This document shows positions 1,464-53,771 of a stretch of DNA of 64,000 nucleotides, piece by piece. The DNA lies in IMG/VR virus record IMGVR_UViG_3300028735_000003, positions 124,001-188,000 of that record; one strand, given 5' to 3'. The notes below the pieces were generated by a model. That model was not told the DNA's origin, ran no database searches, and saw only the letters and a list, made by a program, of their open reading frames with translations. How positions within the stretch are numbered: position 1 is the stretch's first letter; every line of letters starts with the position of its first letter. A program made the translations under genes and the position numbers.

Positions 1464-1477
1464 GATTATCTCTTTAC

Positions 1478-1798
1478 TTAAATTGCCCAGGTTGCTATGA
1501 CTCTTATTGTAGGTTGAACTAATGTCCCAGGACCAGAATAATGTGCTCCAGTGAAATCTGGAGAACCAGTTACTGTCCAACCAACGTTATTTGTTCCATT
1601 ATAACCCACCATATGATAATATCTGACTTGTGTTGTTCCTGATCCTGCACCAACAGAGCAATAAACTGATGCCAATTTAGCATTTGGTAATGATGACTTA
1701 ACTGGGTCTTTAAACTCATGTTTTCCATCATATCTTACATCAGGTGCTGAAGAAGATACCGCAACATATGGAAGAGCTTCACCACTTAAATCAGCCAT
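1478..1798 (-). CDS. Small putative virion protein (106 aa)
   Basis: ATG at 1798 overlaps the upstream stop (TAATG coupling). Its C-terminal half resembles the N-terminus of 5616..8402. Confidence 0.65.
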
Positions 1799-8402: not shown

Positions 8403-8414
8403 CGTTTCCCCTAA

Positions 8415-26454: not shown

Positions 26455-26622
26455 TTTATATTAGTTTTCCCAAAATAAAATCAAATTATATAGCACTTTC
26501 TATAATTTTTTCTATTAAACGTTTTGTTATACTCTTATAGATAAGTGTTCTTATTAATTTAATTAAATGTGTCTAAATCAAATATATCTTGATTTCACTG
26601 CCAAAATCATAATAAAATTCAT

Positions 26623-31996: not shown

Positions 31997-32968
31997 TTAT
32001 TTGAACCACCACTGGTTGTTTAGATACCATGGGACACATAAATTTGATAATCCATCAGACAGCTTAATGGTGGGTTTCCAGCCAAGTTTTTTTAGTTTAT
32101 CTGAATTGATTGAGTATCTAAAATCGTGCCCATTCTTTCTAGGATCTTCAACGAATGTTATCAAATCATGACCAGTCTTCATAACATTACATATATTTTG
32201 TATTACTTCAATATTAGAAAACTCTTGATTTGCAGATATGTTGTATATTTCGTTTGGTTTACCCTCCTTTAACACAGTCATAATTCCAGTACAATTATCG
32301 AATACATGAGTCCAGTCTCGTAGCTGCGAACCCTGTCCGTAAATAGGAATAGGAATGCCCTTTAGAATGTTTTTTATAGCTTTTGGAATCAACTTTTCGG
32401 GCGACTGCCTTGGTCCATAGTTGTTAGCAGACCTAGTAATGTTATAAACTAAACCATGCGATTGGTTGGCTGCTTTTACGATTAATTCTCCAGCAGCTTT
32501 TGTAGCAGCATATGGATTACGAGGGTTGATAGGAGAATCTTCAGTCCATGAAGGCTCATCTTCAGATGTTAATTGACCATATACTTCATCTGTTGATATG
32601 TAAATAAGTTTTTGAACACCATGTTTAATGCAAGCATTTACTATAACTTGTGTTCCTAAAACATTAGACGTTACAAACGAATTAGGATCAATAAATGAAT
32701 GGTCAACAAAAGTCTCGGCAGCACCATGTATAACTATATCTGGTTTTTCAAATTGAAAAATTACATCAATAACATGTTGATCCCTGATATCTGCTATATG
32801 AAATGTATGATTTTTGTTCCAATACATAGAATTAATGACGTTTGAATTAATTCTATCTATACTAACAAAAGAATAAGGTTGTTTCTCATAGATAGCCTTA
32901 CGAATGAAGTTTCCGAATATAAACCCACAGGATCCAGTTATTAAAACTTTTGGTCTGTTATTGTTCAT
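31997..32968 (-). CDS. rfbB: dTDP-glucose 4,6-dehydratase-like NAD-dependent SDR
   Basis: VLITGSCGFI, HGAAETFVD, STDEVYG, YAATK, NNYGPRQ.PEKLIP, RDWTHV.D, HDFRYS. Confidence 0.85.
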   Translation of the reverse strand: MNNNRPKVLITGSCGFIFGNFIRKAIYEKQPYSFVSIDRINSNVINSMYWNKNHTFHIADIRDQHVIDVIFQFEKPDIVIHGAAETFVDHSFIDPNSFVTSNVLGTQVIVNACIKHGVQKLIYISTDEVYGQLTSEDEPSWTEDSPINPRNPYAATKAAGELIVKAANQSHGLVYNITRSANNYGPRQSPEKLIPKAIKNILKGIPIPIYGQGSQLRDWTHVFDNCTGIMTVLKEGKPNEIYNISANQEFSNIEVIQNICNVMKTGHDLITFVEDPRKNGHDFRYSINSDKLKKLGWKPTIKLSDGLSNLCVPWYLNNQWWFK

Positions 32969-32971
32969 TAA

Positions 32972-33802
32972 TTACCTATCATATATGTTAAATTTTTGAT
33001 TTTTTTCGTACATATATTGATCTAGACAATATCGATGTTGCCATTTTTCTCTAAGATATATCAGGTTATGGTTCAAAAATAACCTATTTGTAGGAACCTT
33101 CTTAAGCGAGCTGCTATCTTCATGATAAATATTGGTATTACCACAATATAGAATCTTCTTTTCCATATTATAGTGAATTGCTAAACACAAATCTACATCA
33201 TCAAACCCCCAATGATATTTTTCATCCATTCCATCATTGCCAGATTTTACATTGTGATGAACTTTTCTGTAATATTCTGCTTTAGTTAATAAAACAGCAC
33301 CTGTAACGACTTGAAATAAACGATTTTTCTCAGCAGCATCATCTGTAATTTCATTAAGTCTAAAATGAACAGGCGCTTTGTTATCGTGATTAAATACTAC
33401 ACCAGCATGTTGTAGTCTATTGGTATTTGTAAATAGTAATCTAGCTCCAACAACACCAATACTAGAATCTTTGTCCATTAATCTAATCATTTTTTCAATT
33501 GATGTCTTATCATTAAATATGATGTCATTGTTTAGTAATAGAACATAGTCATTATCATTCGGAGCTGCCTCGTTAAAACACATATTTGTGCCCTGAGAAA
33601 AATTCTGAAGATTATTTGGGTGCTTTATTAGTTTTATATTACCTCTCCAAGAGGCAACTATTTCTGCAGTATTATCTGTTGAAGCATTATCTTTTATAAT
33701 CCAATTATACTCGATATTAGATAAAGCAGGCAAAAGCGAATCTTTTAGTTTAGTTAACTTATCTATTCCATTCCAAGTCAAAGTCAATATATGTAGCATC
33801 AT
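32972..33802 (-). CDS. GT2-family glycosyltransferase
   Basis: DNASTD, NFS...N, LLLNND, VVGARL, QHAGV, VTGAVLL, DDVDLCL, H..S.S. Confidence 0.88.
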   Translation of the reverse strand: MMLHILTLTWNGIDKLTKLKDSLLPALSNIEYNWIIKDNASTDNTAEIVASWRGNIKLIKHPNNLQNFSQGTNMCFNEAAPNDNDYVLLLNNDIIFNDKTSIEKMIRLMDKDSSIGVVGARLLFTNTNRLQHAGVVFNHDNKAPVHFRLNEITDDAAEKNRLFQVVTGAVLLTKAEYYRKVHHNVKSGNDGMDEKYHWGFDDVDLCLAIHYNMEKKILYCGNTNIYHEDSSSLKKVPTNRLFLNHNLIYLREKWQHRYCLDQYMYEKNQKFNIYDR

Positions 33803-34015
33803 ATTTTCTTTCTATATCTGTCAGTTCTTTTTTTTATTTGCACACATCCGGCGACATCTGCCAAACTTGATTTTATTTATAGTGGTATCACAAATAGTTT
33901 TACATTCATTACGCCTTAAAGAATATGGAGTAGCTTGCCATCTATAAAATATGATATATCTTACAAAGATATTATTGCTACTCTATTCATTTTACTAAGA
34001 TATAGTATTACTAGA

Positions 34016-35035
34016 TTAAAACCCCATACTTAAATTGCTTCCAACCATAAAATTACCAGTATAATCTACTTGTATAGATGGTCCAAGATATGTATTTCTA
34101 ATTAGCCCTGAAGAAAATAATTTAGACATATTAAAGTTAATTGGATTAATTATCATCACAAACCTTTTGCTTACCACCTCATATCCAAGACCTAATTGTA
34201 AAATACTTATATTTGGATTGGGTTTATATTGTCCATAACTCATCATACCCAAAGTAATGCCCGTATTAAATGTACCTTGAATACTAGATGTATTTAAATT
34301 AATGCCCCCACCTGATGTTAAAAATAATCTTGGATTCCAAAACTGAAAACTAGCGGAAGGATATTCTTGCTTCGTCTCTGTCTTATCAATACGCAAATCA
34401 TATGATCTGCCATCTACAATAATACTAAATTTATTATATACATACTCGCGCTGATTCTCATCAATACCGGTTATAGTAGCTACCTTATATTGCCTTGGTA
34501 AAATATTAACAAACCAAGGCTCTTTTTTCCAAGCAGAAAACCCTACAGTGCCAATTGGTACGGCAAAAGAACCGAATTGCTCAGATAATGTTAAATCACG
34601 TCTTGCCGTTAAATACCCATTAGGGTCAGCATTTGGACATGGAATTTGCTTTCCATTGCAATCCACTGTGGGAGTTTGAGGATTTGGATTTATTGGACCC
34701 GTCCCTGTACTAGGAACATTATCTTTCTTTACTCCTCCACTAGTTACAGTAATCACATTAATAGCCTTAATTTCAGCATGTAGTTTATCCATGTCATTTC
34801 TAATAACATTTATATCTACACCATTATTTTTGGCGAATACTTCAATATCTTTTTTAGTAGCATACTCATTTAAACTTCGTGTTATATTATCAGATAATTC
34901 TTTTTGTTTTACAACTTCTGTTTCTATGGCTTTTTGTCTCTCAGACATTTCAAACTGCTTGTAAATTATTAATGAGACAGCACAAACAGCAACAGTTACT
35001 ACTAAAATTATTAATATTTTATTTGATAATGACAT
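34016..35035 (-). CDS. Membrane-anchored protein with N-terminal TM helix, coiled coil and beta-rich C-terminus; possibly spanin-like
   Basis: ILIILVVTVAVCAVSLIIY TM segment, helical stalk, amphipathic strands ending GSNLSMGF. Start is ATG 35035 or TTG 35065. Confidence 0.55.
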   Translation of the reverse strand: MSLSNKILIILVVTVAVCAVSLIIYKQFEMSERQKAIETEVVKQKELSDNITRSLNEYATKKDIEVFAKNNGVDINVIRNDMDKLHAEIKAINVITVTSGGVKKDNVPSTGTGPINPNPQTPTVDCNGKQIPCPNADPNGYLTARRDLTLSEQFGSFAVPIGTVGFSAWKKEPWFVNILPRQYKVATITGIDENQREYVYNKFSIIVDGRSYDLRIDKTETKQEYPSASFQFWNPRLFLTSGGGINLNTSSIQGTFNTGITLGMMSYGQYKPNPNISILQLGLGYEVVSKRFVMIINPINFNMSKLFSSGLIRNTYLGPSIQVDYTGNFMVGSNLSMGF

Positions 35036-35094
35036 AATGACATAACCTTGTGTTAAGACATTCAATAGACTTCTATATCTTCACCTATACCAAA

Positions 35095-35799
35095 TCATTT
35101 CTTCCATTTATTAACAAAAATTTCCCTGGCAGATTTATACAGTTGATATGTATTCAATTGAGAGCTTGTTTGCCTTCCAAAATGTACAACCGGTATAGAT
35201 ACTACTTCAAGAGGTATGCCAATTTTTTTTGCTCTGAAAGATAAATCTGTATCTTCGAAATATGCGATTCCAAATTCCTCTGAGAAAATCTGTGGAACAC
35301 ATGCGTCTGTAATTATACATTCTGTTTTCCTAGGAATATCTAATTGCGACCATATGTGTTTTGACCCAGCAATACACCATCCAGATAAATATGACTTTCC
35401 AGACAGTTTTTTATTTGCTTCCATTACAAATTCTAAATTATCATTTAATAATCCCATTGTAGGACCACATAGTGAATTTGCACATTTATCTATTAATGGT
35501 TTTGTCCAATCTTCATGATTGGACCTAACCCTTATATCATTGTTTAAAAATAAAACATTTGGAGCGGTTGCCAAATAATATCCAATATTACAGGCTTTTG
35601 CAAATCCCATATTATATGAATATCGCTTGTATACAATTTCTGTAGATTCTTTTAAAGATGATTCTGTTTCATCTGTACTTCCATTATCTACAATAATAAT
35701 TTCATGATCATTAGTGAGTCTTGTTAGATCTTTTAAGCAAGATCGTGTAAAGTTGTATTTGTTGAATACTGGGACTACTATGCTTAGTATTTTATTCAC
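35095..35799 (-). CDS. GT2-family glycosyltransferase
   Basis: LSIVVPVFN, IIIVDNGSTD, GFAKACNIG, FLNND, YFEDTDLS. Confidence 0.9.
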   Translation of the reverse strand: MNKILSIVVPVFNKYNFTRSCLKDLTRLTNDHEIIIVDNGSTDETESSLKESTEIVYKRYSYNMGFAKACNIGYYLATAPNVLFLNNDIRVRSNHEDWTKPLIDKCANSLCGPTMGLLNDNLEFVMEANKKLSGKSYLSGWCIAGSKHIWSQLDIPRKTECIITDACVPQIFSEEFGIAYFEDTDLSFRAKKIGIPLEVVSIPVVHFGRQTSSQLNTYQLYKSAREIFVNKWKK

Positions 35800-35947
35800 T
35801 ATTTAATCTCTCTTTTAATATATATTTATGATTTATATTCCATAATCACATATTTAATTCCAATTTTCGTTTTGTAAGTTATTACTGCATTATAATCAAG
35901 TTTATAATATTGAATATGATCAGACCCTCACATTTATATGTATTTTA

Positions 35948-37084
35948 TCATATACACAGACTTAAAATCTTCCTGGCAGCCTTTTCCCAAGTATAGTTTA
36001 TAATAAGCTCTTGCATATTTGGAGAAAATTTCGAATGATAATCGTTGTAATTACCTACGACATCTTTTAATGCTTGCGCAGCTTTATCTACATCTGCCGC
36101 AAATACCTTAGCATAAGGAGAGGGTTCCCAATATTGCATTCTTGCATCAGCTCTTATTTCCTTTCCATCTATAAGTACAGAATTCTCATCATTCATAAAG
36201 TCTAATTGTCCTCCATAACGTGGGGCAATTACGATTTTGTTAGCGCCAAATCCTTCAAGTCCAGGCATCCAAAAACATTCCGCATATGACATAGAAAATA
36301 CAATGTCACAAGAATTATACAGTGCTTCAATATCTGGAATGAAGTGGTCAATAATCTCTACATCACCGTGTTTTCTAAAGTCTTGGCAGAAATCTCTATA
36401 TATATCGTTAAACGGAACGCTATCTGTTGTATCTTGCGGACTCTTTCTAGATACTTTTAAAACAAGACATACATCATCTTTATTAGTAAATGCTTTACCA
36501 TACGCCTTTAGTACATTAGGAATGTTTTTTCTCAAATGCGGTTGGGCAATATTGACAAGTATCTTGTATCTCTTCTTTGTCTTTAATGGATATTTGCCTA
36601 CTGTAGAAAACTTTTCCAGATTAATTCCGTGAGGAACAACTACTTGATGATTTTCTGGTATTCCATTGTCAACAAATATCTTCTTTGAAAATTCAGAAGA
36701 TGGTAATACTTTATCTACGCTTTTATACGCTTTGGCAAAAGCTTTTGGTAAAACTGTTGTCTCATAATTCCAAATACCAAACCTATTTTTATCGCCCCTT
36801 ACAAAATAATGCGCGAAATTCTTTAGTGCTGTATATGATAATTGCATATCATATGATCTATCTAAAGACGAATTAATATAATTAATTAATTCTGGTGTAA
36901 ATGGATCTCCTTCTTCTATACTTCCCTTTAGAAAAGGTTGTAAATCATCCGGGAAATGAGTTCTACCGTTAGTAGAAAATAAATCCACTGTATGACCCAT
37001 CTTGATAAATTCTCGTGAGAGATTTTGAGCTACAATGGACCAAGAAAAATTTTTGGCGAGAAAACCAAACCAGCATATTTTCAT
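35948..37084 (-). CDS. GT4 (GT-B fold) glycosyltransferase
   Basis: ETT..P, PSSEF, VVPHGI, RKN, LYNSCD, AECFWMPGLE (E-x7-E), GGQLDF, YTWE. Confidence 0.85.
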   Translation of the reverse strand: MKICWFGFLAKNFSWSIVAQNLSREFIKMGHTVDLFSTNGRTHFPDDLQPFLKGSIEEGDPFTPELINYINSSLDRSYDMQLSYTALKNFAHYFVRGDKNRFGIWNYETTVLPKAFAKAYKSVDKVLPSSEFSKKIFVDNGIPENHQVVVPHGINLEKFSTVGKYPLKTKKRYKILVNIAQPHLRKNIPNVLKAYGKAFTNKDDVCLVLKVSRKSPQDTTDSVPFNDIYRDFCQDFRKHGDVEIIDHFIPDIEALYNSCDIVFSMSYAECFWMPGLEGFGANKIVIAPRYGGQLDFMNDENSVLIDGKEIRADARMQYWEPSPYAKVFAADVDKAAQALKDVVGNYNDYHSKFSPNMQELIINYTWEKAARKILSLCI

Positions 37085-37132: not shown

Positions 37133-37708
37133 GTCAATAACCCACGAATAAAGTCGTGGGCTTGCTGCTCAAAACATTAGTTTTGGCTGCATTTGGCTGA
37201 TTGACAACAACCTGCTCGTTATTCTTTTCAGCTAACGAGATAAAATAATTTGTCTTAATATTTTTAGCAGCATTAATATCTGCATGTTCTATGTAACTAC
37301 ATTTGCTACAAATATATTTCGACTTATTTCTATTAGACTTTTCAATAATTCTACAATTAGAACATTTTTGAGAAGTATATCTTGCATCAACTTTAACTAC
37401 TTGTTTTCCTAATGCTCTAGCAGGAATATCAGGATAAAGAGATAGTAATTTCTCATATAAATCTTGATGAGCTTTAACTTTATTGGTCGATTTATTTTGG
37501 AAAGCCCACTCGACATGATGCGAATAGATATCTGCACAGGTTTTTAGGAAGTCTAAAAACCCATCAGGAGCGGATAAATAAAAACTATAAGTTCTTCGCA
37601 TCACAGATATATCATTAGCAGTATAAAATAAAAATAATAAGCGGATTAACTTTTATAATCCGCAATTCCTCCCACGGCTAAAGCCGTGGGTCTCATTGCG
37701 AGGTTTTC
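37133..37708 (-). mobile_element. Internally deleted copy 2 of the tnpB element (non-autonomous)
   Basis: Both hairpin ends near-identical to copy 1; also preceded by TCAT and ending TTGAC; about 670 bp missing internally. Confidence 0.88.
37134..37604 (-). pseudogene. tnpB: TnpB remnant with in-frame internal deletion
   Basis: YPDIPA is fused to (R)ALGKQVV; RuvC-I and RuvC-II are lost, the zinc finger and RuvC-III are kept. Confidence 0.85.
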
Positions 37709-37937
37709 ATGATCTTTGGCAAGGATACTACCATCTTGTGGTGACGGAAAATTGTTGCTCCGTAATTATTTTTTATCTATACTACAGGCTTTATGACAAA
37801 AAATAAGAACGGAGCTTTCTCCATTACTTATTAATTATAATATTACCATGTATGTCTTTCACAATTGGGAACAAATTATATCTAAAATAAAACATTACGA
37901 TCATTTATTATAAATGCAATACACAAATCCTGTGTCC

Positions 37938-37976: not shown

Positions 37977-40900
37977 TCAAGCAGGTAGTATGTGCAAGAA
38001 AGGAACAAAATTATAGCTGTGAGCATATGTATCGCTTGGGCTACCATCACCATATGTAGACGGATTATTATAAGTAATTACCAATCTGACCATCTTACAA
38101 ATAGCTGCTTCTAATCCGCTTCCAGGAGATAGACTCAAATGTACTTCATAAACAAAATCAGAGGCTCCTTCAGATAATTCCGATGCTATATTGTTAGAAG
38201 ATAAATATGTAGCTTCTGTATTAGTGGTAGTCATACCAGTCATATAAATATAACTATGTGTAGACACATTATACAATTGTATTTGGGCAGTATTTGCAAC
38301 ATTAGTGGTCTCAAGTATAGCTTCCAGCTTAATTTCCTTTAAAGATTGACCAATGTATTTATCAAATCTAAATGGGAAAGCACCAATAACAGTTGGAGAA
38401 GCGCTATTATGAGAGAACACTCCAGCAGTACCATAAATATATACCGGATTCTTATAGTAGAAGCTTGGATCTAACTTACCATATCCATCAGTCTTAGGAA
38501 CTCTGTTAGCATCAAGTGTGCCACGAGAAAAAGATCTAACACCTTCTAGATCATAAACGAATTGATAACTTAATGCACCACCAGAACTCATTAATACTGT
38601 ACCATAAGGACCAGTATCATTAAGTCCTGTACCACCATGAATGATTGGTAACACACCAGTTACTTCTGTTTCAAGATCAATTAATGTGGATGGACCGCCA
38701 ATTGCAGGACCACTGAATACACTAATCAGTGATAATATATTCTGTACCTTAGCAGAATCAACAAATAAAGGAGTATTGTTAAATCCGCCTTTCTTAAGAT
38801 ATACGCTTATCTGAATCTTAGTACTTAGCGTTCGTAATACTAAATCTTCATATAAATTAGTGAAGTTAAGTGTCAATAAACCGTTCTCATAATCTACAGA
38901 AACCCCTATTTTACCATCAACAATGATACCTTCATATCCATCTCCAATACCATTAGTATTAGGAGAAAATGACTGTACGGCTACAGAAAATCTAACCTGA
39001 TCTTTAGTCAATGCATCAGATTGAACAAAAGAACAATCAGCGAATCTCATGGCTGGAAATCCAAGTTTGGTTAATCCAGTTGGTAATCCTGTTGTTCCAT
39101 CAAGTTCGCTAGCAATAAAGTCTTGTAATATATTTATTGTTTTTTCTGAAGAGTACAATCCATTTGGAATCTCAATAACAACAGTACCTACTTCGAAATC
39201 TACCTTATAGAAAGTGCCATCAGGTCTCTGAAGATCTCCTTCTCCAATAATAATGTTATTTGGGGCAAATATATCTATCTTACCAGGATCAAAGTCTGGT
39301 TGAGATGAAAATACATTACACAATATACCATCTAAAGAGCAAGGATGACTGCCTGCCCCAGACAATGTTGTAAATACGGTTGGAACTAATTTTGCTTTGC
39401 TGTTACATACTATTAGATTTTCGTTCCATGTTAATTGTTTTTGAACATTAAACGCGACTGGTTCTGTATAAAAGTTATGATTTGCAAAATAAGTATCTCC
39501 TTCAAATACATCTTGTGGTGGGTGTATCTCAGTAGGTCTTCCAGTAGATACTGAAGAATAATCGTCAGTTCTATCAATGAATTTTTCTACTTTAAGTCTT
39601 AATACATTAAACTTTGTGCCGATTTTTGTGTAAGGATCTGTGGTTGGAGCCGGATATGTTTGGAATGGGGACGAAACATGATGAACCCTATTTATGTAGT
39701 TTTGTACTAAATAACCATCTCCAATAGTTACGGCAAAATCTCCATTGATATCAGCGCGAAGCATCTGAGCAATAGTATCTCCAGTAAGTATAACTTTTCG
39801 GATGGTTAATACATCTGATGTTCCATCAACGCCAACAATATCAAAAGCCCCCTTGTTAGTTAGGTCTGAAGGAGAAACAATTACTAATTTATAGCTTGAA
39901 ATCCCTATAATTGAACTAAAATCTATAGTGGAAGATGTAAACAAGCCTATTCTTTCATCATTAGGATCTGCAAGTAATACTCCATCTAATGCGCTAGCAA
40001 CTACTGACCCATATCCATCAATTAATTGGAACTCTAAACCAAATGCATTATTAAATGGATTGATGTAGGCACTGTAACCGTTAGTATATGTAGTAGTGAT
40101 TCCATCAGTTGTAACAATTGAATCTTGTGGTAAACCTGTATTAAAATTGAAACCAAGATATGATACTAACAAATCAAGATCTGTTGAATCTATGATGCCA
40201 TCTCCGTTGACATCACCTACAATCATAGAGCACAATCTAGCGTCAGATACACGATAATATATATTTGGTCTATCGGCATCTGGAGTAATCTTAGCATCTA
40301 CAAAATCACCATTTAATAAATTATATTCTAAATTAATAACAGACGTATCATATCTTCCTGTATCAGTTTGATCTGTTACAATCCTTATTAAGATTTCATC
40401 TCTAGCAAAAGTTGCAGCATGTAAATTAGAAGCAAATACTGAGCCGGCAGGGTCGAAAGATTTTTTATTTTTATCTGATATGGCACCCAGTATTAATGGC
40501 TCAGATGCAGCTTCGAGATTTACAATATCGGTTGAATTAAGCAATCTTATTTCAGGCACGTATTCTTGTCTTGAATCAACTGGTTGCCCAGTTCTTTGAT
40601 CAGGAATAGGTACACTCTCCAATGTTGTTGCTGACAAAACTGCTCTATATACATCATTCCCCGTAAATTGCAAACCTTTATACGAATAGTCTACGGTTGC
40701 TTGTGTAGTAGTGTCCACCGTAGTCTTAGGTATAATAACACCGTGTCCTGTATCATATCCTTGACCATCCGAGATCTTTGCGGCAGATGTCCAAATTCTG
40801 AACCATAAATCTTCTTCTGGTATGTCAACCCACAATGTTCCAGTAAATGTGGTAATTCTGGAATTATCAAGCCTATTAGAACCATTATCAATTAGAATAT

Positions 40901-42020
40901 CACATTTATTTGCAGAACCAGAGCGTTTAAGTGTGAAAGCGTAATAATTTCCAACAGTTAAAGCTGCTCCTGCTGCAATCGGGCTATTACTAAACACAAA
41001 ATCTACTGGTTGTGGAACAGAATTACCATAGCCATCATCTAATACAACACCCATTGCTTTTAAGCTGTCATAGTTAACACTTATTTGAGCAATAGGCATA
41101 TTAGTTGGGGCAAAATCTATTGCCAAATCAGGAGCTACATCAGATGGGCACTCTATACTAGTTTGTAGAGGATACACACTTAGAACCAAATCACCAGTCC
41201 ACGCTAAATCAGTTTCGGACCCCGGCTCAAGGTTTCTAACAGATAATAATAATGTGATCTTTTGAATATTATTTGTAGTTGCGATGAACTTTTGACCTAT
41301 TTGTGTAGTAACATCACCGTGTGACAATACCTTTTGGTCTTTACTTCCGGTATATATTCCAAGAGTATCTATATTATAGTATGGCAAAGCAGCCTGTAAT
41401 GCCGTTGATAGTGATAAAGTGCCGTTGAAGAACATATCCCTAAAAAACAAGTTTGGTTCAACGTCCTGTGCTAGCATAATTGCACTACGCGATAACGTCA
41501 TAGGGTTTGCCTCTCTAATCACTATTCGTCCACCAAGATTTAATGATAAAGAGGGATCACCAATAAAATCGTTAAACAATAATACTAAAATTTTAGTAAA
41601 ATGTTTTTGACCAACTTGAATCTCATTGGTTTTGAATACAAATGTCTCAAATTGTAAGTTACTTTCAAAGTCTAACCCTATTACTGCGATTTTTACAGTT
41701 TTTCTTCCTGCCGCTAGTGAATTGGTCAGTTCAATTTCTAATTGATTTCCAAAATTACTATCTGTTGGTTGGGATATCCTATAATCAGTGTTAGATGCCG
41801 CCCTAGCATCACCATCTAGATATCCGCTAACTAGAGAAGAGTCAAATAATACATTCTGAACCAACGCCTCTGGCAATACACCAGAACCAATGTGGTTATT
41901 TATGATACCTGATTGTATTGTATCATTATAGCCTTGTTCTAATGTCAAATCTGAGTCATCGACTTGCTCGGCGTCGAACCAAATATTTTTAATGGCGGAA
42001 ACAGGATTTCTTTTTGTCAT
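37977..42020 (-). CDS. Large baseplate-associated/fibre protein with dockerin-like EF-hand repeats, 5 DGY motifs
   Basis: Follows the baseplate wedge genes. GDVNGDGIIDSTD and ADINGDFAVTIGD repeats; fibre-type GVLPIIHGGTG motif; C-terminal domain shared with the collagen proteins. Confidence 0.65.
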   Translation of the reverse strand: MTKRNPVSAIKNIWFDAEQVDDSDLTLEQGYNDTIQSGIINNHIGSGVLPEALVQNVLFDSSLVSGYLDGDARAASNTDYRISQPTDSNFGNQLEIELTNSLAAGRKTVKIAVIGLDFESNLQFETFVFKTNEIQVGQKHFTKILVLLFNDFIGDPSLSLNLGGRIVIREANPMTLSRSAIMLAQDVEPNLFFRDMFFNGTLSLSTALQAALPYYNIDTLGIYTGSKDQKVLSHGDVTTQIGQKFIATTNNIQKITLLLSVRNLEPGSETDLAWTGDLVLSVYPLQTSIECPSDVAPDLAIDFAPTNMPIAQISVNYDSLKAMGVVLDDGYGNSVPQPVDFVFSNSPIAAGAALTVGNYYAFTLKRSGSANKCDILIDNGSNRLDNSRITTFTGTLWVDIPEEDLWFRIWTSAAKISDGQGYDTGHGVIIPKTTVDTTTQATVDYSYKGLQFTGNDVYRAVLSATTLESVPIPDQRTGQPVDSRQEYVPEIRLLNSTDIVNLEAASEPLILGAISDKNKKSFDPAGSVFASNLHAATFARDEILIRIVTDQTDTGRYDTSVINLEYNLLNGDFVDAKITPDADRPNIYYRVSDARLCSMIVGDVNGDGIIDSTDLDLLVSYLGFNFNTGLPQDSIVTTDGITTTYTNGYSAYINPFNNAFGLEFQLIDGYGSVVASALDGVLLADPNDERIGLFTSSTIDFSSIIGISSYKLVIVSPSDLTNKGAFDIVGVDGTSDVLTIRKVILTGDTIAQMLRADINGDFAVTIGDGYLVQNYINRVHHVSSPFQTYPAPTTDPYTKIGTKFNVLRLKVEKFIDRTDDYSSVSTGRPTEIHPPQDVFEGDTYFANHNFYTEPVAFNVQKQLTWNENLIVCNSKAKLVPTVFTTLSGAGSHPCSLDGILCNVFSSQPDFDPGKIDIFAPNNIIIGEGDLQRPDGTFYKVDFEVGTVVIEIPNGLYSSEKTINILQDFIASELDGTTGLPTGLTKLGFPAMRFADCSFVQSDALTKDQVRFSVAVQSFSPNTNGIGDGYEGIIVDGKIGVSVDYENGLLTLNFTNLYEDLVLRTLSTKIQISVYLKKGGFNNTPLFVDSAKVQNILSLISVFSGPAIGGPSTLIDLETEVTGVLPIIHGGTGLNDTGPYGTVLMSSGGALSYQFVYDLEGVRSFSRGTLDANRVPKTDGYGKLDPSFYYKNPVYIYGTAGVFSHNSASPTVIGAFPFRFDKYIGQSLKEIKLEAILETTNVANTAQIQLYNVSTHSYIYMTGMTTTNTEATYLSSNNIASELSEGASDFVYEVHLSLSPGSGLEAAICKMVRLVITYNNPSTYGDGSPSDTYAHSYNFVPFLHILPA

Positions 42021-42065: not shown

Positions 42066-45000
42066 TTATCGTGTGTATTGTATGTAGACCTTGCTATTGG
42101 CAGGTTTGAGTGTCTTTATGAGCTTTTCCAGAACCTCTTGAACCTTTACACTGCTATTTACTATACCGAAAGAATCAAAAATATTAATGGAGAAGTCAAA
42201 CGCGCCAGTATTTCTATTAATAATGGTCGTAAAATCTTCATTTTTAATATTTGTTGAGTCGCTATCCAATAGATATGTTGTGTACAAGTCCTTAGTCACC
42301 GGGTACACTATATTTAAGTTGCTATTGTAATTAACATCAATTGGCTCACCATATGGGGAATAAACTGGTCTTGATATGTTGCTAATTCTGAGATTATTTA
42401 TCAACCCGAATAGCTTATTCGAACCAGTATACTGAGAACCAATATATAACGTATGTATTGGATCTTTAAATCTAATATTTCCAACGATGTTGGAGCCAAA
42501 TCCAACTCTAACAGAGCCCATAACAGTAGGAGAGTTTCCGAATACTAATCCAGACCCGAATAAAATACTTGAATCATTGCCATATTCGTAACCATCAAGG
42601 AACAAACTTATTTCATCTTGACCCTTACCACCATTTATCTTATATCCTACCCTAACACGATGCCATGTATTTCTGACCCAACGTGTTGGGGCACGGACAA
42701 CATAATCAGTTCCAGATGCTGAGATTGCAAAATTAATATATCCAAATTCATCCTTGTATATTGCCATCCTATCGCCCTGCATTCCATTAGGGATATATTT
42801 TACAAGAACTTTAGACTTTTGTGCTGGCAATTTTCTGTTTAATCTTATTATTTGTGTATTTAGAGTCACATTGTTATTTTGTAGTGTTTGATAAGTAACA
42901 GTAACCTCTGTATTTGGATCTGGAAGTGTTTTGGCTAAATAAATTGTCTTTCTATCTGGTCCAATAGAACCTCCAGCAAAGTAATCAGTTGCAGAATAAT
43001 CTCCTGGTATCTTAACGGATATTATTTGCAATATTGGTAAGTCTACTTCTACGACTGTTGCGGAAGTGCTTGTATAATTTCTCATGACAGCGCGCTGAGT
43101 ATCAATTTCAACCTTCCCGCCAGCAAAATAATCAATCTTTGGATCGCCTGATTTTAACGTGACGCTTAGAACTCTATCAACCGTATGAGGCAATTTTACA
43201 GATACCAAGTCTGTGCTGACTGCTTCTTCTATTACTGCACTGGTAGCGTCAAAATAGAATCTTGTTACAGGATCATTTGCGGTATCATATAATGGACATG
43301 TCCAAAATTCTATAGTACCCTGCTTTCTAAAATCTAATATTCCATCATTACCCAAAATCATAGGCTCTGATATGATAGCTAAGCTATCCCCGAAATTCTC
43401 ATTGACCTTGGCAGAAGAATGGAACTGTTGTTTGTCAGTGTAAGTATTGATATAGAAATCAGCCTCATTTGTGAACGGATATTTGTCAAAATTAATCAAC
43501 ATTAAAGTGTCGCTATCTTTCTTAAGAGGCTTTATAGAGTTAAAGTCTTTCGTAACAGATCTTTGATTACTACTTACTTGTTCTCCGATTCTTGTATCAG
43601 TAAGCATACTAGAATAGACTTTTGTCTGACCTATAATTGCATTTATTTGGTTTCCGCCAAACATGTCTGACCCCAAGAATACATCTCCGCGTGGCAAATC
43701 TAATTTAATTCTAGCGTATGTTTGATAGTCAACCTCATAAAATCCATGAGATAACATGTAGGCAGTACTTGGTAACAAACCAACTTCTAGAGTTATGAAT
43801 CCATTCTGTAAACCGCTTCTGTAATCACTAACATTTAGAATCTGATACACACCACCAGTAAAAGTTGGTATTGGATAAGGAGGATATGGTCCCGCTGTTG
43901 TTGCTTCTATTGTAAGTGTCTTTTTATCAGAAGAAACACCAAGTATTCTATAGAATCCAGCGGCTATTAGTGGGGATTGAATTACTAAATACCCACCAAC
44001 ACAATGATCACTGAATGTATAATATCCATCTGATACAGTATTAGAGCCTGTACTATACAGAGTAGTTCCTGTGCCAATTTGATAACTATATCTAACAACA
44101 GGCGCTAACCCACTGAATTCACTGTATGTGATTGGATATTTCTCTCTAACATCCAAAACAAGAGCATTCTTGGAAGAATTGATTGGTCTGGCAACAACAT
44201 TAATATAGTTTATAGAAATATATGGATTTGTAAAATCCAAGGTACCATAATCATCAAAATATATAGTTTCACTTACGGTATAAACCCCGGTTACTCCATT
44301 TATAGTAACTGCCACCGGTGTTGAGAAATCTACATTATTACCAGATATTGTGACACTGATTGTTCTACCAAATTGACTATTTGAAGGATGTGTACAAGGG
44401 AAATTAATTGAATGAAACTCTCCCCCAATAAGCGTAGAATTTGAAGGACCTATGGCTGAAGCATATCCGTCATTCAATATTAGTTTAGTTATATGCAATT
44501 CATCTAGAGATATTGGAGGAGGCATCCTGGTCATAAGAATATTTTCACGTTCGTCACTCCAAACATAATATTGCTTTTTAATTCTCCTATGATTCAATCC
44601 AAGTGTTCTGATTAGAATCAAATCATTAGCAAAAACAGAATTAGAAATAGTTAGTATATTGTTGAAATATCCATCTTTAGATATTGAGTATGATGGCCTT
44701 GTTGCTCTTACACCCGGTATTTCGATTTCATCATTTGAATAAATATTAAATTCTACATTACTCAACGCCACTGGCAAATCGCCAGATATTTTTAATGAAT
44801 TATTAGATACCTGCAAAATAACATAAGTAATTGGCAGCGCAGGATCATTAATTCTGATCGAATAACCAGCCAACACACCCGCTGTAGTAAAATTAATTGA
44901 TCCAGATGTTACAATATTTGTATTTATAGAACCAGATAAATCAGATCCAGAAACCATAGAACTAATTCTGGTAATTTGAATATTGGAGGCAATATCAATA

Positions 45001-48000
45001 TCTGATTTTACTATATATTTTGTTCTATTTATTGAATATCTTCCGTTTGTGATAGACGCTGGCATAGGCTGTGCCAATGTAAGTGTCTGACCGAAAACTG
45101 TTATTATTGTATAACCAGATTCGTCAAATCCAACTTCATCAATAAATATCTTATCTCCACTAAATATATTGTATGCACTAAAATCAACGCTTGATGATAC
45201 TGTATATCCATCCAGCGTTGTTACTAAATCAGTGCTGGCAATGATATCTCTATTAGAGAGCCCCAAAACCTCTTCCGGATCTACTGTTCTGAAATTTTCA
45301 TGTAAATAAGGTTGTAATTTTTGCCCATATTTAACTATATTAGGAACCTCAAAACCATCGATAAACAAATGCATTTCATCTCTGCTATCAATTGTATTTA
45401 GTTTCCATGATACCGCAACATGATGCTGGTCAAATGCCTTCCATGAAGATATGTCTGCACTGACATTGTATTGTACGCAATCTCTGTCTATAGTTCTAAA
45501 GTTTAAATAGCCTCCCGAATCTTTAAATATCGACACTCTGTTGCGTAATGCGCTCTCACCAAAATCCAATAAATAATGTGGGAAATCAGACAAAAATGTT
45601 ATAGCGCTATCTATAGGAGAACCACCTGTTATGTTTATAGTTATACTATTGGCTCCAGTAAACATACTTAAATTTGGTGGTTTAGGCAACACAACAGATT
45701 TTGCATCATAAATTGTGCCCGGGGTAGTAATCTTAATATTATAAGTAGAGCTAGTAGAATTAACATATCCATCTATTACTTCAACATACCATCTAGAAAA
45801 ATCTCCAGACACATCCTTATCGTAATATATAAAGACGCCATCTTTATTATTATTCGGATATCCGTGCGCTATAGATAGTTTATTTAATGTAAATAGACCA
45901 TTAACTATAACTGGGTGGTCTTCAGAAGCGCCAATAAATACCTCTCCTGGATCAATTGTAGAACCATTCTTCAAAATATTAAATGTCAAATCTGCATCAT
46001 TATCAAGACCATTCCACTGTGGCGTAATCCAAGTTTCAAATGTCCCCTCTTCTAATTTGATATTGGAATTTAATGGAAAAGTTATGGTTTGATTCGGTGC
46101 ATTTACCAACACACCATTATAGAACTTAGCTGGCAATAAACTGAATTCACCGGTTGTAGATATATCTCTTGGATTTAGAAGGCTATTTCCTAGTGACCAC
46201 CCACCAAATACAGACTCAATAATCTCTGGAGTAATATGAGATATTGTTTTGCCAATATTTTTCATGGCAGGAATGGTTGGTCCCTGTATGAATGAAGATA
46301 ACGCAGCCATTAAAGCTTCTCGATACCTCTCTCTATCAAAATCTATGTCAAAAGTTGTTAACTCTGGTATGTTGACTAAATTACCAAAATTCCTATACAA
46401 TGCATCTCTTAGTGCTCCAGCCTTATATGATACATAATATGTGGTGTTGGTTTGCAAACTATTTGTTGAACGAAAATCTAGTACGTTATCACCATATTCA
46501 TAACTAAGAATCAGCTCATCAGCCAAATAAGTATAATCAACGAAATAATCACCTTTATTATAGTCAACCATTACAGAAGATAAATCTTTAATTGCAAATG
46601 AATATGTTATACTGACTGTATCACCTAATACTGGAGAACCTGTTCCGGATAACACTAATTTTAATGGATTGCCTGGCACTACTGTTCCAGAATAATCCCA
46701 TAATTCTTGAGAGTCAGATATTCTAATCACGCTATATGTATATGTTATATTTGGAGAAATATAAGGTATATTTTCATTTATGTTTACATAAAAATCGGTG
46801 CCATCAAATAAAACATTATCAAATGTTTGTTTTGAAATTGTATCTACATATATATTAAAATCTGAATTAGTAGAATTAATAGCAAAGTTAATTGGTGCTT
46901 TGCTGTTCTTTAGGTCAGACATCTCATATATTGCTCTGACAAATTTTATTTGATTTGTTACACCAGCAACGAAAGCAGAATCCACAAATGAGCCAATTTG
47001 TCCTGAGTATAAGTAATATTGGGTAGTATTATTATCATTTAGGAATAATTCATCGGTATATTCCAATGTACTTGGAACTATCGAGCCATCTTCAAACGAC
47101 AAATAACTAAATGATTTACTCTTCGATACCAATGTATTAACTCTATAGTAGATATCTTCAACCGATATAATATGCGGATTGTTTGGAGAAATATTATTTG
47201 TTTTATATGTTGCTTCACCAATAATATTGTTTTGTGTAGCAGATACTGCGCAATAAATTATCCCATTAATATAATCTATTAAGTAATCTCCGATAGATTG
47301 CAAAATATCTAAATTAGTTTCGGCAGATTGCCTTCTATCAAACCAACGTTCAGAAACAAATATGTTTGGCTTAGAAAAGCTTACGCTTGAGTTAAATGCG
47401 TATCCAATTCCATCTTCAGTGGCAGATACTAACATATTATTTTTTAAAAAGATCTTAAATATTCTTAATCCGCCAGTATTGAATACTGTATCATTCACGA
47501 ATAACATCTCATTTGCTTCCGTTGCAAACGAAGCTCGTTCTCCGATCTGAGCATTAAGTCGCGGCGGATTTCTATACTTAAAATAGATCTTATTATCATT
47601 CCATCTAGTTACATTGTAGATTTCGCCAGAAGTTTCGTTGTATACTCTAAATACATTTGTTATTGGGTAATTTAGTGTTTTAACTACATTTAAAGCCAAC
47701 AATCTATTTTGGGCTCGTTCTGTTAAAGCCTCTTGATGTAATGCTGATTTGTAATCTATTCCTGGTACTAATACTTCTTCATATGAAAAAGATATTGTTC
47801 CACCGAAATTTACTAAACTTCCATTAGGCAAAGCCACAATTTCAAACGTACTTGGATCGTATGTATAATCGATTTCCGATTGATATGTAAATCTATACTT
47901 ATATGTTGCAAGAGGGGGGAAAGCTCCCGTACCGTCATTATTTAGATCAGCACCGAATACATAAACTGTTCCGGTACTATAATCAATAGAATATTGTCCA

Positions 48001-53339: not shown

Positions 53340-53771
53340 TTATATTGTAGAGACTCTAAAAGCAGTAGTAATTGGTTTAGACCCTTTAGTAAAAGCCTTA
53401 ATTCTTACGTCAAACAATCTTGGATCTATTTTATTTCTAATTATAGATATATCCAAAATAGCTCCTAATTGCTCGTCTGCGCTCATTCTTTGGAAAGATT
53501 TAATCTGAAGATCTTGTAATGTCTTCAAGTTCTCCAATGATTTATTAAGCTGAGATTTTGCCATTTGGACTAAAACATCATTTTGATTAGGATTACCTAC
53601 TATAGTTCTAGATAGATAAGATCCATACCACGGATGTTGAGGATTAGATCCTGCCGTAGTTAAACATATCTTAAGTATATCCTGTATTAACTTTTCAGAA
53701 TCAACTACAGTTTGTAGTTTGCCCTTGTTAATTACCAAATCACCTTTATTTATCTTCAAATCAAACGACAT
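53340..53771 (-). CDS. gp25/gpW-like baseplate wedge (sheath initiator) protein
   Basis: GDLVI...KLIQDILK...T..GS...HPWYGS; size and position immediately before the J-like gene. Confidence 0.75.
   Translation of the reverse strand: MSFDLKINKGDLVINKGKLQTVVDSEKLIQDILKICLTTAGSNPQHPWYGSYLSRTIVGNPNQNDVLVQMAKSQLNKSLENLKTLQDLQIKSFQRMSADEQLGAILDISIIRNKIDPRLFDVRIKAFTKGSKPITTAFRVSTI

What the first reader, a model, noticed from the sequence alone, without database searches (positions are those of the whole stretch)
31997..37084. Phage sugar module (GT4, two GT2, RfbB-like dehydratase) immediately downstream of the baseplate/fibre genes
Seen: three GTs and a dehydratase with intact TDE and YxxxK catalytic motifs. 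Established: RfbB/RmlB makes the 4-keto-6-deoxy precursor of rhamnose-type sugars, and virion glycosylation by phage GTs has been shown in actinobacteriophages. Inference: with the GT at 1..455, these could build an oligosaccharide on virion proteins. The alternatives are DNA hypermodification or host-surface modification, but no base-hydroxymethylase gene is visible in this window.
Basis: partly seen in the sequence, partly recalled or inferred. Interest (0 to 1): 0.6.

Follow-up and report, generated by a model that had tools for sequence, protein, structure and literature searches.

The report
Conserved sugar-building operon in a megaphage
An uncultured giant phage carries, right after its baseplate and giant tail genes, a conserved set of three sugar-transferring enzymes and one sugar-activating enzyme; it probably puts a short sugar chain on some target, most plausibly the phage's own particle proteins, but the target cannot be read from sequence.

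Summary
Window 31997-37084 (minus strand) encodes an RmlB-like dTDP-glucose 4,6-dehydratase with intact TDE and YxxxK motifs, two GT2 glycosyltransferases and one GT4.

The window lies in a 353,765-bp viral record (about 79% complete). Baseplate_J and baseplate-wedge genes and two giant unassigned ORFs lie upstream.

The gene order fibre-like ORF, GT4, GT2b, TM349, GT2a, RmlB, tubulin recurs in dozens of related 350-480 kb phage contigs at 40-80% identity. Stop and start codons often overlap, so it looks like one late operon.

- RmlB is an orphan: the held genome has no RmlA, RmlC or second SDR.
- All GTs are soluble, and there is no flippase, polymerase or other polytopic membrane protein.
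- The only ThyA-fold protein is a true thymidylate synthase next to DHFR. No TET/JBP or C5-methylase was found, so DNA glycosylation is disfavoured.
- The two GT2 genes are present or absent together.
- GT4 occurs in two divergent types.

Virion-protein glycosylation is the best reading (about 0.4). Late remodelling of a host envelope glycan is not excluded (about 0.25). This is a new member of a known kind; interest is moderate.

The parts
31997..32968 (-). RmlB-like NDP-glucose 4,6-dehydratase (323 aa), last gene of the module; an orphan in this genome
   Evidence: TIGR01181 333.9 bits, cut-off 365.1. Top solved-structure matches are all RmlB. T126-D127-E128 and Y153/K157 are present; the Rossmann motif reads TGSCGFIFG, with Phe in place of the third Gly. 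No PF00483, no PF00908 and no second PF01370 gene in the held 354 kb.
32972..33802 (-). GT2a, soluble family-2 glycosyltransferase (276 aa)
   Evidence: PF00535 52.5 bits. Weak match to the rhamnosyltransferase subfamily TIGR01556, E 4e-6. No hydrophobic segment. 3-nt gap to RmlB; in relatives the gap is mostly -4 to +12 nt.
34016..35065 (-). TM349: N-terminal membrane anchor, long helix, Pro/Thr-rich linker, beta domain and a small C-terminal beta-barrel; function unknown. The likely true start is M11 at 35035.
   Evidence: No Pfam, PHROG or NCBIfam match. Hydrophobic segment at 7-40. Model pLDDT 77.5. Residues 232-339 resemble 8-stranded barrels: Z 9.2 to a designed barrel, about 5 to OmpW, NspA, PagL and OprF. 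The C-terminal residue is F, L or W in 26 homologues. Atlas clusters are virus-only.
35095..35799 (-). GT2b, soluble family-2 glycosyltransferase (234 aa)
   Evidence: PF00535 59.4 bits. TIGR01556 rhamnosyltransferase subfamily E 9e-8. Profile matches to generic GT-A enzymes, including GalT1 of Fap1 glycosylation. Present or absent together with GT2a.
35948..37084 (-). GT4-type (GT-B) glycosyltransferase (378 aa), first gene of the module
   Evidence: PF13439 32.0 bits against 28.5; PF00534 24.5 against 26.4. phrog_2170 E 5e-25. E269-x7-E277 is conserved in 21 orthologues. Found after the fibre-like ORF in all but the most distant relatives.
37133..37717 (-). Miniature IS605/TnpB element (ends only, internal deletion) inserted between the fibre-like ORF and GT4; not part of the module
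   Evidence: Cas12f1-like TNB domain in ORF 37134-37604. Inverted repeat with the fuller copy at 26614-27875, 94-98% identical. At least 10 copies genome-wide. Absent at this site in relatives.
37977..42020 (-). 1347-aa ORF directly upstream; presumed fibre or peripheral baseplate protein
   Evidence: Only a dockerin-type repeat was found. No PHROG or solved-structure match. Always precedes GT4 in relatives, with a gap of 50 nt or less in about two dozen loci.
42066..49229 (-). 2387-aa ORF, presumed tail or baseplate component
   Evidence: No family match. Syntenic between Baseplate_J and the 1347-aa ORF in relatives.
49229..53326 (-). Baseplate_J-like protein (1365 aa)
   Evidence: PF04865 79.3 bits; phrog_6 baseplate wedge E 5e-36.
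53340..53771 (-). Baseplate wedge protein (143 aa)
   Evidence: phrog_2669 E 6e-12.
3..455 (-). N-terminal GT2 domain of a 356-aa soluble glycosyltransferase (genome 123385-124455), next to a collagen-repeat gene
   Evidence: PF00535 41.2 bits on the full protein. N-terminal similarity to SunS-type peptide glycosyltransferases, E 1e-13.
477..1580 (-). Collagen-repeat protein (367 aa), a candidate fibre and possible acceptor; two more lie at 4877-5602 and 10364-10975
   Evidence: PF01391 81.5 bits; collagen-like adhesin models.

Best explanation
The four enzymes form a late-expressed, cytoplasmic glycan-building operon that is a stable part of this megaphage lineage.

Proposed steps, all inferred:
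1. The orphan RmlB converts host-made dTDP-glucose into dTDP-4-keto-6-deoxyglucose. Either this sugar itself or a 6-deoxyhexose finished by host enzymes (such as L-rhamnose) becomes a donor.
2. The soluble GT4 puts the first sugar, or a core sugar, on an acceptor.
3. The optional GT2a/GT2b pair extends or branches the chain.

The most likely acceptors are the phage's own structural proteins made at the same time: the giant baseplate and fibre proteins just upstream, or the collagen-repeat fibres. That would give a glycosylated virion.

What is shown: the enzyme families, the catalytic motifs, the operon structure, conservation, solubility, and the absence of partner pathway genes. What is inferred: the donor sugar, the order of transfer and the acceptor.
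For: - Enzyme identities and motifs.
- Synteny: found with GT4 as probe in 40 loci (38 from the GT4 probe, 2 from the TM349 probe) and, independently, with the downstream tubulin as probe in 80 loci.
- Of 42 distinct RmlB-bearing loci with at least 6.5 kb upstream, 32 have GT4+GT2b+TM349+GT2a and 6 have GT4+TM349 only.
- Junctions are tight. TM349 to GT2a and GT2a to RmlB are mostly -4 to +12 nt. The fibre-like ORF to GT4 gap is 50 nt or less in about two dozen loci. All genes run on the strand of the baseplate block.
- All ten GT or dehydratase proteins of the genome lack hydrophobic segments, and no large polytopic membrane protein is encoded.
- In three relatives, in-frame intein-like inserts sit exactly at the AAE|T and S|TDE motifs of RmlB. 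This is expected for a gene under strong constraint.
- Another GT2 lies beside collagen-repeat fibre genes.
- Precedent for virion glycosylation by phage GTs: as summarised in PMC12619734 and PMC11256854.
Against: - No glycan, acceptor or expression data exist. No RNA runs hold this DNA.
- The conserved block also contains genes with no sugar link: TM349, Fpg in 19 relatives, tubulin, GH25 and homing endonucleases. Position is therefore weak evidence of target.
- The GTs have no close relatives among phages with proven virion glycans. There are only 23-32% partial matches to Streptomyces phage GTs, which lie beside RNR and endolysin genes.
- An envelope-type protein is embedded in the operon and often translationally coupled to GT2a. 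This could point to the cell envelope instead.
- RmlB scores below the curated equivalog cut-off and has Phe at the third Rossmann glycine.
Confidence: 0.4

Rival explanations
1. Host envelope remodelling. The soluble GTs work at the inner face of the membrane on host lipid-linked intermediates (O-antigen, capsule, or the general O-glycan of a diderm host). The host's own flippase and ligase export the altered glycan. This would mask receptors against superinfection or stop progeny sticking to debris. TM349 would be an envelope partner.
For: - Jumbo-phage clusters of NAD-dependent epimerase/dehydratases plus several GT families have been interpreted this way (PMC7824862).
- Peripheral GTs of polysaccharide pathways are also soluble.
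- TM349, with a membrane anchor and an OMP-like C-terminal barrel, is embedded and often overlaps GT2a.
- Variable GT content (GT2 pair present or absent, two GT4 types, extra GT2s in distant relatives) resembles O-antigen locus diversity.
- An orphan RmlB makes sense if the host supplies RmlA, RmlC and RmlD.
Against: - No initiating transferase, flippase, polymerase, GtrA/GtrC-type or acyltransferase-type membrane protein is present.
- The core is conserved and syntenic across the clade rather than sporadic.
- It follows late structural genes, a poor time for exclusion functions.
- TM349 is found away from any GT in distant relatives, between a UDG and IF3, so it is separable from the sugar genes.
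Confidence: 0.25
2. The acceptor is TM349 itself. Like autotransporter adhesins that are glycosylated in the cytoplasm by an adjacent transferase before export, its Pro/Thr-rich linker would be glycosylated before insertion into the envelope.
For: - GT4, TM349 and RmlB are the minimal set kept when the GT2 pair is absent.
- TM349 often overlaps GT2a.
- A Ser/Thr/Pro-rich stretch lies around residues 115-135.
- Weak fold matches to autotransporter and OMP barrels.
Against: - In distant lineages TM349 homologues lie far from any GT or RmlB gene, and the GT module there lacks TM349.
- One relative keeps the enzymes but not TM349 (L031).
- The fold matches are weak.
Confidence: 0.07
3. DNA hypermodification. 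The GTs glycosylate modified bases in phage DNA to evade restriction.
For: - Phage GTs do this in T-even and other phages (own knowledge; also noted in PMC12619734).
- A DNA glycosylase (Fpg/Nei) sits inside the module in 19 relatives.
Against: - The only ThyA-fold protein is a true thymidylate synthase (TIGR03284 305 bits against a cut-off of 108) beside DHFR.
- No TET/JBP hit was found, although that model also gave no hit in the control genomes, so the test is weak. No C5-methyltransferase was found.
- 6-deoxyhexose donors are not known for DNA glycosylation (own knowledge).
- About 21% of the genome is not held.
Confidence: 0.05
4. There is no common function. The run of genes is inherited synteny of unrelated accessory genes, and the GTs act on different, unrelated targets.
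For: - The block mixes sugar enzymes with a DNA glycosylase, an envelope protein, tubulin, lysozyme and mobile endonucleases.
- Jumbo-phage gene order is often functionally mixed (own knowledge).
Against: - Four sugar enzymes within 5 kb.
- The two GT2 genes are always present or absent together, with at least two independent events on the RmlB tree.
- Start and stop codons overlap.
- The genome holds 8 GTs in total, so three adjacent to the only sugar-nucleotide enzyme is unlikely to be chance.
Confidence: 0.1

Closest known systems
Actinobacteriophage virion glycosylation (mycobacteriophage GTs that decorate capsid and tail-tube subunits; Freeman et al. 2023, as cited in PMC12619734 and PMC11256854)
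   Same: Phage-encoded soluble GTs lie beside virion structural genes, and the number of GTs varies between related phages.
   Different: - No detectable orthology. The best matches are 23-32% over part of GT4 to Streptomyces phage GTs that lie beside RNR and endolysin genes.
- Here a sugar-nucleotide dehydratase is part of the operon.
- The host is probably diderm, inferred weakly from TM349's OMP-like barrel.
- The genome is about 450 kb.
- No glycan has been observed.
Sugar and GT clusters of jumbo phages and cyanomyoviruses, read as LPS or capsular polysaccharide modification systems (Iyer et al. 2021, PMC7824862)
   Same: One or more NAD-dependent epimerase/dehydratases plus several GT families in a jumbo phage, with GT content varying between relatives.
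   Different: - Those clusters are described as sporadic and polymorphic and often carry full sugar-production sets: kinase, nucleotidyltransferase and isomerase.
- Here the core (GT4, RmlB) is fixed at one locus after the tail genes across the clade, and the pathway is reduced to an orphan dehydratase.
Bacterial rmlABCD dTDP-L-rhamnose pathway
   Same: The phage protein aligns end to end with solved RmlB enzymes and keeps all catalytic and substrate-binding motifs.
   Different: - RmlA, RmlC and RmlD are absent from the held genome.
- A 100%-complete relative has RmlB as its only SDR and no RmlA or RmlC.
- The score is below the curated equivalog cut-off.
- The third Rossmann glycine is Phe or Met across the clade.
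Giant-virus glycosylation machinery (chlorovirus and mimivirus GTs and a sugar 4,6-dehydratase; own knowledge)
   Same: A large virus carries its own 4,6-dehydratase and several soluble GTs, together with collagen-repeat fibre genes. GT4 gives a weak match to chlorovirus B736L, and RmlB matches entry 6vlo ('putative dTDP-D-glucose 4,6-dehydratase'), which I recall from memory to be a giant-virus enzyme.
   Different: Those viruses have eukaryotic hosts and encode the follow-up epimerase/reductase. No such second enzyme is present here.
Seroconverting prophage systems (GtrABC, Oac)
   Same: Phage-encoded GT2 enzymes; phrog_841 'GtrB-like' gives a weak match to GT2b, E 2e-8.
   Different: GtrB has C-terminal membrane helices and works with the polytopic proteins GtrA and GtrC. 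None of these features is present here.

Membership tests
dTDP-glucose 4,6-dehydratase (RmlB/RfbB, extended SDR) | Catalytic Thr-Asp-Glu triad and Tyr-x3-Lys | tested here: met
   T126-D127-E128 within STDEVYG, and Y153/K157 within YAATK. Both align with the same motifs of solved RmlB enzymes.
dTDP-glucose 4,6-dehydratase (RmlB/RfbB, extended SDR) | N-terminal Rossmann motif TGxxGxxG for tightly bound NAD+ | tested here: inconclusive
   The motif reads TGSCGFIFG. The third Gly is Phe here and Phe or Met in orthologues. The effect on NAD binding is unknown.
dTDP-glucose 4,6-dehydratase (RmlB/RfbB, extended SDR) | Score above the curated equivalog cut-off (TIGR01181) | tested here: not met
   333.9 bits against a cut-off of 365.1. 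It is still by far the best model: the next family type, GalE, scores 131 bits.
dTDP-glucose 4,6-dehydratase (RmlB/RfbB, extended SDR) | Closest solved structures are RmlB enzymes over the full length | tested here: met
   The ten best chains are all dTDP-glucose 4,6-dehydratases, E 3e-69 to 1e-47, covering residues 5-323.
dTDP-glucose 4,6-dehydratase (RmlB/RfbB, extended SDR) | Activity on dTDP-glucose rather than UDP- or other NDP-glucose | not testable with these tools
   Needs an enzyme assay.
Complete dTDP-L-rhamnose pathway (RmlABCD) | RmlA, RmlC and RmlD encoded with RmlB | tested here: not met
   No PF00483, no PF00908 and only one PF01370 gene in the held 354 kb. RmlC was found in 1 of 8 large relatives and RmlA in 4 of 8, elsewhere in the genome.
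Glycosyltransferase family 2 (GT-A fold) | Pfam PF00535 above the gathering score | tested here: met
   GT2a 52.5 bits and GT2b 59.4 bits against a cut-off of 23.3.
Glycosyltransferase family 2 (GT-A fold) | Acidic DxD-type metal and nucleotide-binding motif | tested here: inconclusive
   At the expected place both proteins have NND, with invariant D93 (GT2a) and D88 (GT2b). A later invariant DVD (202-204) or DTD (183-185) is also present. Assigning these to the canonical motif is my inference.
Glycosyltransferase family 4 (GT-B fold, retaining) | Pfam GT4/GT1 domains above the gathering score | tested here: inconclusive
   PF13439 scores 32.0 against 28.5 and passes. PF00534 scores 24.5 against 26.4 and fails, or 26.9 when summed in the genome search.
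Glycosyltransferase family 4 (GT-B fold, retaining) | E-x7-E motif in the C-terminal domain | tested here: met
   E269-x7-E277. E269 is invariant and E277 is at least 90% conserved in 21 orthologues.
Phage virion glycosylation system (actinobacteriophage type) | GT genes encoded beside virion structural genes | tested here: met
   The module directly follows the Baseplate_J gene, the 2387-aa ORF and the 1347-aa ORF on the same strand, in the window and in relatives.
Phage virion glycosylation system (actinobacteriophage type) | Glycan demonstrated on capsid or tail proteins | not testable with these tools
   Needs virions or recombinant proteins, or metaproteomics.
Phage virion glycosylation system (actinobacteriophage type) | Homology of the GTs to those of phages with shown virion glycans | tested here: inconclusive
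   There are only 23-32% partial matches to Streptomyces phage GTs, and none to mycobacteriophages at E 1e-5 or better. This counts against kinship, not against the same kind of function. tblastn is not a sensitive test for remote GT homology.
Seroconversion systems (GtrABC / O-acetyltransferase type) | Membrane-embedded partners: GtrA flippase, GtrC-type GT, polytopic acyltransferase, and GtrB with C-terminal membrane helices | tested here: not met
   No hydrophobic segment in any of the ten GT or dehydratase proteins. No large polytopic membrane protein among 389 ORFs.
Jumbo-phage polysaccharide-modification clusters (Iyer et al. 2021) | Epimerase/dehydratase plus several GTs; sporadic and polymorphic among related phages | tested here: inconclusive
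   The composition fits. The core is conserved at a fixed locus in 38 of 42 informative loci, which does not fit. The GT2 pair, the GT4 type and extra GT2s vary, which does fit.
DNA glycosylation (T-even or TET-dependent type) | An enzyme that makes hydroxymethyl-pyrimidine: a dCMP/dUMP hydroxymethylase, or a C5-methylase plus TET/JBP | tested here: not met
   The single ThyA-fold gene is a true thymidylate synthase beside DHFR. No PF00145 hit. No PF12851 hit, but that model also gave no hit in the control genomes. Only 79% of the genome is held.

The most novel reading that the evidence does not exclude
A whole lineage of 350-480 kb phages from microbial mats and other environments carries a fixed, late-expressed system for glycosylating its own particle. 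An orphan phage RmlB would divert host dTDP-glucose into a 6-deoxy or 4-keto sugar. A GT4, with an optional and exchangeable GT2 pair, would place that sugar on the giant tail, baseplate or collagen-like fibre proteins. This would be the first virion glycosylation system outside actinobacteriophages. It would have a built-in donor-sugar enzyme and allelic variation of the glycan.
Probability: 0.35. Interest if true: 0.65.

Novelty: new member of a known kind. Interest (0 to 1): 0.4.

Why it matters
Sugar coats on phage particles are documented only in a few actinobacteriophages, where they affect antibody recognition. If this module decorates the virion, glycosylated particles would be a regular feature of a widespread megaphage lineage. 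That would bear on adsorption, stability and recognition.

The locus also offers a compact set to test: one dehydratase, one GT4 and a GT2 pair that comes and goes as a unit.

If the target is instead the host envelope, it is an example of a lytic giant phage rewriting surface glycans late in infection.

Either way, the orphan but strongly conserved RmlB raises a clear biochemical question. In some relatives it is invaded by intein-like inserts at its active-site motifs. What is the donor sugar when RmlC and RmlD are missing?

Tried and rejected
- Megablast of the module against GenBank phages found no match.
- tblastn of GT4, GT2a and TM349 against GenBank phages gave only weak, partial or no matches, so there is no cultured relative to lean on. 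The Streptomyces phage context was uninformative: the GTs there lie beside RNR and endolysin.
- A scan of bacterial genomes with RmlB returned only 26-33% matches from unrelated phyla, so it gave no donor or host clue.
- Solved-structure sequence searches for the 1347-aa and 2387-aa ORFs found nothing.
- Profile searches of the three GTs against solved structures gave only generic GT-A and GT-B matches that do not indicate the acceptor.
- Foldseek on the TM349 model gave only weak rows. The VIA search gave a small-barrel match for the C-terminus only.
- The promoter and terminator scan was not above shuffled expectation. The only usable result is two terminator-like hairpins inside the IS remnant region.
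- A recurrent GATATAGAA upstream of three module genes is not a general promoter motif; most of its 19 copies lie inside genes.
- No RNA run holds this DNA, so expression timing could not be checked.
- One paper search failed on term syntax, and the primary virion-glycosylation paper is not held. That work is therefore cited only through papers that summarise it.
- Complex prediction was not used. I claim no specific protein pair, and neighbouring genes alone are not reason enough.
- I considered TM349 as a spanin-like lysis protein. Its distant homologues sit between a UDG and IF3 rather than with lysis genes, so nothing supports that idea.

Full report
**What the window is.** The 64-kb window is bases 124001-188000 of a single 353,765-bp viral record, estimated 79% complete and 33% G+C. 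The standard code gives full coding density. Nearly all genes in the window run on the minus strand. The same DNA occurs in microbial-mat and hot-spring metagenome runs; no RNA run holds it. Megablast finds no GenBank phage relative.

**Checking the observation.** On the minus strand, in order of transcription, lie five genes:
- GT4, 35948-37084, 378 aa.
- GT2b, 35095-35799, 234 aa.
- An unassigned ORF here called TM349, 34016-35065, 349 aa.
- GT2a, 32972-33802, 276 aa.
- An RmlB-like protein, 31997-32968, 323 aa.

Pfam, PHROGs and NCBIfam confirm the family assignments.

The dehydratase matches the dTDP-glucose 4,6-dehydratase equivalog at E 8e-100. Its 333.9 bits are slightly under the curated cut-off of 365.1. 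The next different enzyme type, GalE, reaches only 131 bits. Its ten best solved-structure matches are all RmlB enzymes, aligned end to end. The TDE triad (126-128) and YxxxK (153-157) are intact. One deviation is that the third glycine of the Rossmann motif is Phe. It is Phe or Met in orthologues.

GT4 has the E-x7-E motif, conserved in 21 orthologues. It missed TM349 and the small IS remnant between GT4 and the upstream gene.

**Surroundings.**
- Upstream in transcription are a baseplate wedge gene (53340-53771), a Baseplate_J protein (49229-53326), and two giant ORFs of 2387 and 1347 aa. The giant ORFs have no family assignment except a dockerin-type repeat. 'Baseplate' is confirmed; 'fibre' is positional only.
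- Downstream follow a TubZ/PhuZ-type tubulin interrupted by a LAGLIDADG intein, a GH25 lysozyme, a UvsW-like helicase, DnaB, ribonucleotide reductase and PhoH.
- The module thus sits at the junction of the tail block and a replication and nucleotide block.
- Further on (477-10975) are three collagen-repeat proteins and large beta-roll proteins, with another soluble GT2 beside them.

**Is it an operon, and is it conserved?** Using GT4 as probe, 38 related viral contigs were fetched, some of 430-480 kb and rated complete; the TM349 probe added two more. In these 40 loci the order is 2387-aa ORF, 1347-aa ORF, GT4, GT2b, TM349, GT2a, RmlB, tubulin, sometimes GH25, then helicase, at 40-80% amino-acid identity.

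To avoid ascertainment through GT4, I repeated the search with an alignment of the downstream tubulin. Wherever enough upstream sequence is held, RmlB lies directly before tubulin, and in all but a few distant loci the rest of the module follows the fibre-like ORF.

Among 42 distinct RmlB-bearing loci with at least 6.5 kb upstream:
- 32 have all four partners.
- 6 have GT4 and TM349 but neither GT2.
- 1 has only a GT2a fragment.
- 1 lacks TM349.
- 2 distant ones have the GTs elsewhere.

On an RmlB tree, the joint absence of the two GT2 genes needs at least two events on well-supported branches, and up to six by parsimony. The two GT2 genes therefore behave as a unit.

GT4 occurs in two types, 65-80% and 41-48% identical to the window's, within loci whose other genes are about equally similar. 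Distant relatives add further GT2 genes.

Gene junctions are tight. TM349 to GT2a and GT2a to RmlB mostly overlap by 1-4 nt or are separated by under 12 nt. The fibre-like ORF is 50 nt or less from GT4 in about two dozen loci. In the window the gap before GT4 is wider because a miniature TnpB element has been inserted.

**Sugar metabolism in the genome.**
- The held 354 kb has no RmlA-type nucleotidyltransferase, no RmlC, and no second SDR that could be RmlD.
- Among eight large relatives, one 446-kb genome rated 100% complete likewise has RmlB as its only SDR and neither RmlA nor RmlC.
- Other relatives carry extra SDRs and an RmlA elsewhere in the genome.
- The conserved element is thus an orphan dehydratase. 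Its substrate, dTDP-glucose, and any later steps must come from the host, or the 4-keto sugar is used as such.
- In three relatives the RmlB ORF is about 340-375 aa longer, with in-frame inserts at the AAE|T(H)VD and S|TDE motifs. One insert begins with Ser and ends in His-Asn; another begins with Cys and ends in Gly-Asn. These inserts give sub-threshold intein matches.
- The genome has six GT2 and two GT4 genes in all. A second cluster at 308-313 kb alternates three GT2 with three methyltransferases.

**Which acceptor?**

DNA:
- The only ThyA-fold gene scores 305 bits on the thymidylate synthase equivalog (cut-off 108) and sits beside DHFR.
- No C5-methyltransferase was found. No TET/JBP was found either, although that test is weak because the model gave no hit in the control genomes.
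- No known route to a glycosylatable base is visible, so this alternative is disfavoured, within the limit of 79% completeness.
- The Fpg/Nei glycosylase found inside the module in 19 relatives is absent from this genome. It is best seen as an unrelated passenger.

Host surface:
- None of the ten GT or dehydratase proteins has a hydrophobic segment, and no large polytopic membrane protein is encoded.
- Gtr-type or Wzx/Wzy-type mechanisms are therefore not encoded.
- Soluble GTs could still act on host lipid-linked intermediates. This is how similar jumbo-phage clusters have been read (PMC7824862).

Virion proteins:
- A fixed position at the end of the tail operon, likely late co-transcription, solubility, conservation as a lineage trait and the neighbouring collagen-repeat fibres all fit.
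- There is precedent in actinobacteriophages, as summarised in PMC12619734 and PMC11256854.
- None of this is direct evidence.

I put virion glycosylation at about 0.4, host-envelope remodelling at about 0.25, TM349 as acceptor at about 0.07, DNA at about 0.05, and no common function at about 0.1.

**TM349.**
- It has an N-terminal membrane anchor continuing into a long helix, a Pro/Thr-rich linker, a beta domain and a C-terminal small barrel. Residues 232-339 give Z 9.2 to a designed barrel and about 5 to OmpW, NspA, PagL and OprF.
- The last residue is F, L or W in all 26 homologues. This weakly suggests a diderm host.
- Its relatives are virus-only hypothetical proteins.
- In more distant phages its homologue lies away from any sugar gene, between a uracil-DNA glycosylase and IF3. 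In that lineage the GT module lacks it.
- I therefore treat it as separable from the sugar enzymes and of unknown function, while noting that it is co-transcribed with them here.

**Verdict.** The finding is real and is a conserved feature of an uncultured megaphage clade. It belongs to a known kind, the phage-encoded sugar-nucleotide and GT clusters. Its particular traits are an orphan and strongly constrained RmlB, a GT2 pair inherited as a unit, two GT4 types, and a fixed place after the tail genes.

Noticed in passing
window 26614-27875 (+) and 37133-37717 (-); genome-wide copies, e.g. genome 284741-285996: An IS605-type TnpB element has spread in this phage genome, with at least 10 copies or fragments at 87-100% identity. 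It includes miniature derivatives that keep only the two ends. Two inverted copies flank the 9.3-kb block from GH25 to GT4. Relatives lack them at these sites.
   Followed up: partly
window 28932-31736, 12508-14892, 15302-18787, 23926-26454: Four genes in the window carry inteins or intein-like inserts with homing-endonuclease domains: the TubZ/PhuZ-type tubulin, PhoH, the ribonucleotide reductase large subunit, and the UvsW-like helicase. The helicase has a 350-aa insert that is absent from relatives.
   Followed up: partly
L009:15397-17385, L047:11851-13938, L097:7875-9974: The RmlB orthologues of three relatives are 662-699 aa long because of in-frame inserts exactly at the AAE|T(H)VD and S|TDE active-site motifs. 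One insert begins with Ser and ends in His-Asn; another begins with Cys and ends in Gly-Asn. Intein_splicing scores are 24-31 bits, below the cut-off of 35.8.
   Followed up: partly
e.g. L011:6349-7182, L015:11390-12253 (19 loci): An Fpg/Nei-family DNA glycosylase sits between GT2b and TM349 in 19 relatives but is absent from this genome. In a distant lineage the TM349 homologue directly follows a uracil-DNA glycosylase (L180). This recurring pairing of a DNA glycosylase with TM349 is unexplained.
   Followed up: partly
window 34016-35065: TM349 combines an inner-membrane-type anchor, a long helix and a C-terminal OMP-like small barrel ending in an aromatic or hydrophobic residue. It may be an envelope-spanning phage protein of a new type, and it hints at a diderm host.
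   Followed up: partly
genome 308392-312971 (L004:8392-12971): A second sugar cluster holds three soluble GT2 genes interleaved with three SAM-methyltransferases and a small RIO/ABC1-like kinase, which suggests methylated sugars. A Thg1-like gene lies beside it.
   Followed up: no
window 477-1580, 4877-5602, 10364-10975; 8415-10268: Three collagen-repeat proteins and a 617-aa protein with an antifreeze-type beta-roll lie in one block, with a soluble GT2 (genome 123385-124455) next to the first. They may be whisker or fibre proteins and glycosylation candidates.
   Followed up: no
genome 109291-111286 (L003:5291-7286): Thymidylate synthase and dihydrofolate reductase genes are separated by another TnpB C-terminal fragment. 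An IMP dehydrogenase/GMP reductase-like gene lies just upstream.
   Followed up: no
L010:15945-16679; L009:11153-12307; L010:12105-13085; L041:11199-12434: Free-standing homing-endonuclease-type genes (GIY-YIG/NUMOD3, and DUF4379 treble-clef zinc finger) are inserted at various gene junctions of the module in relatives. They account for most length differences between loci.
   Followed up: partly
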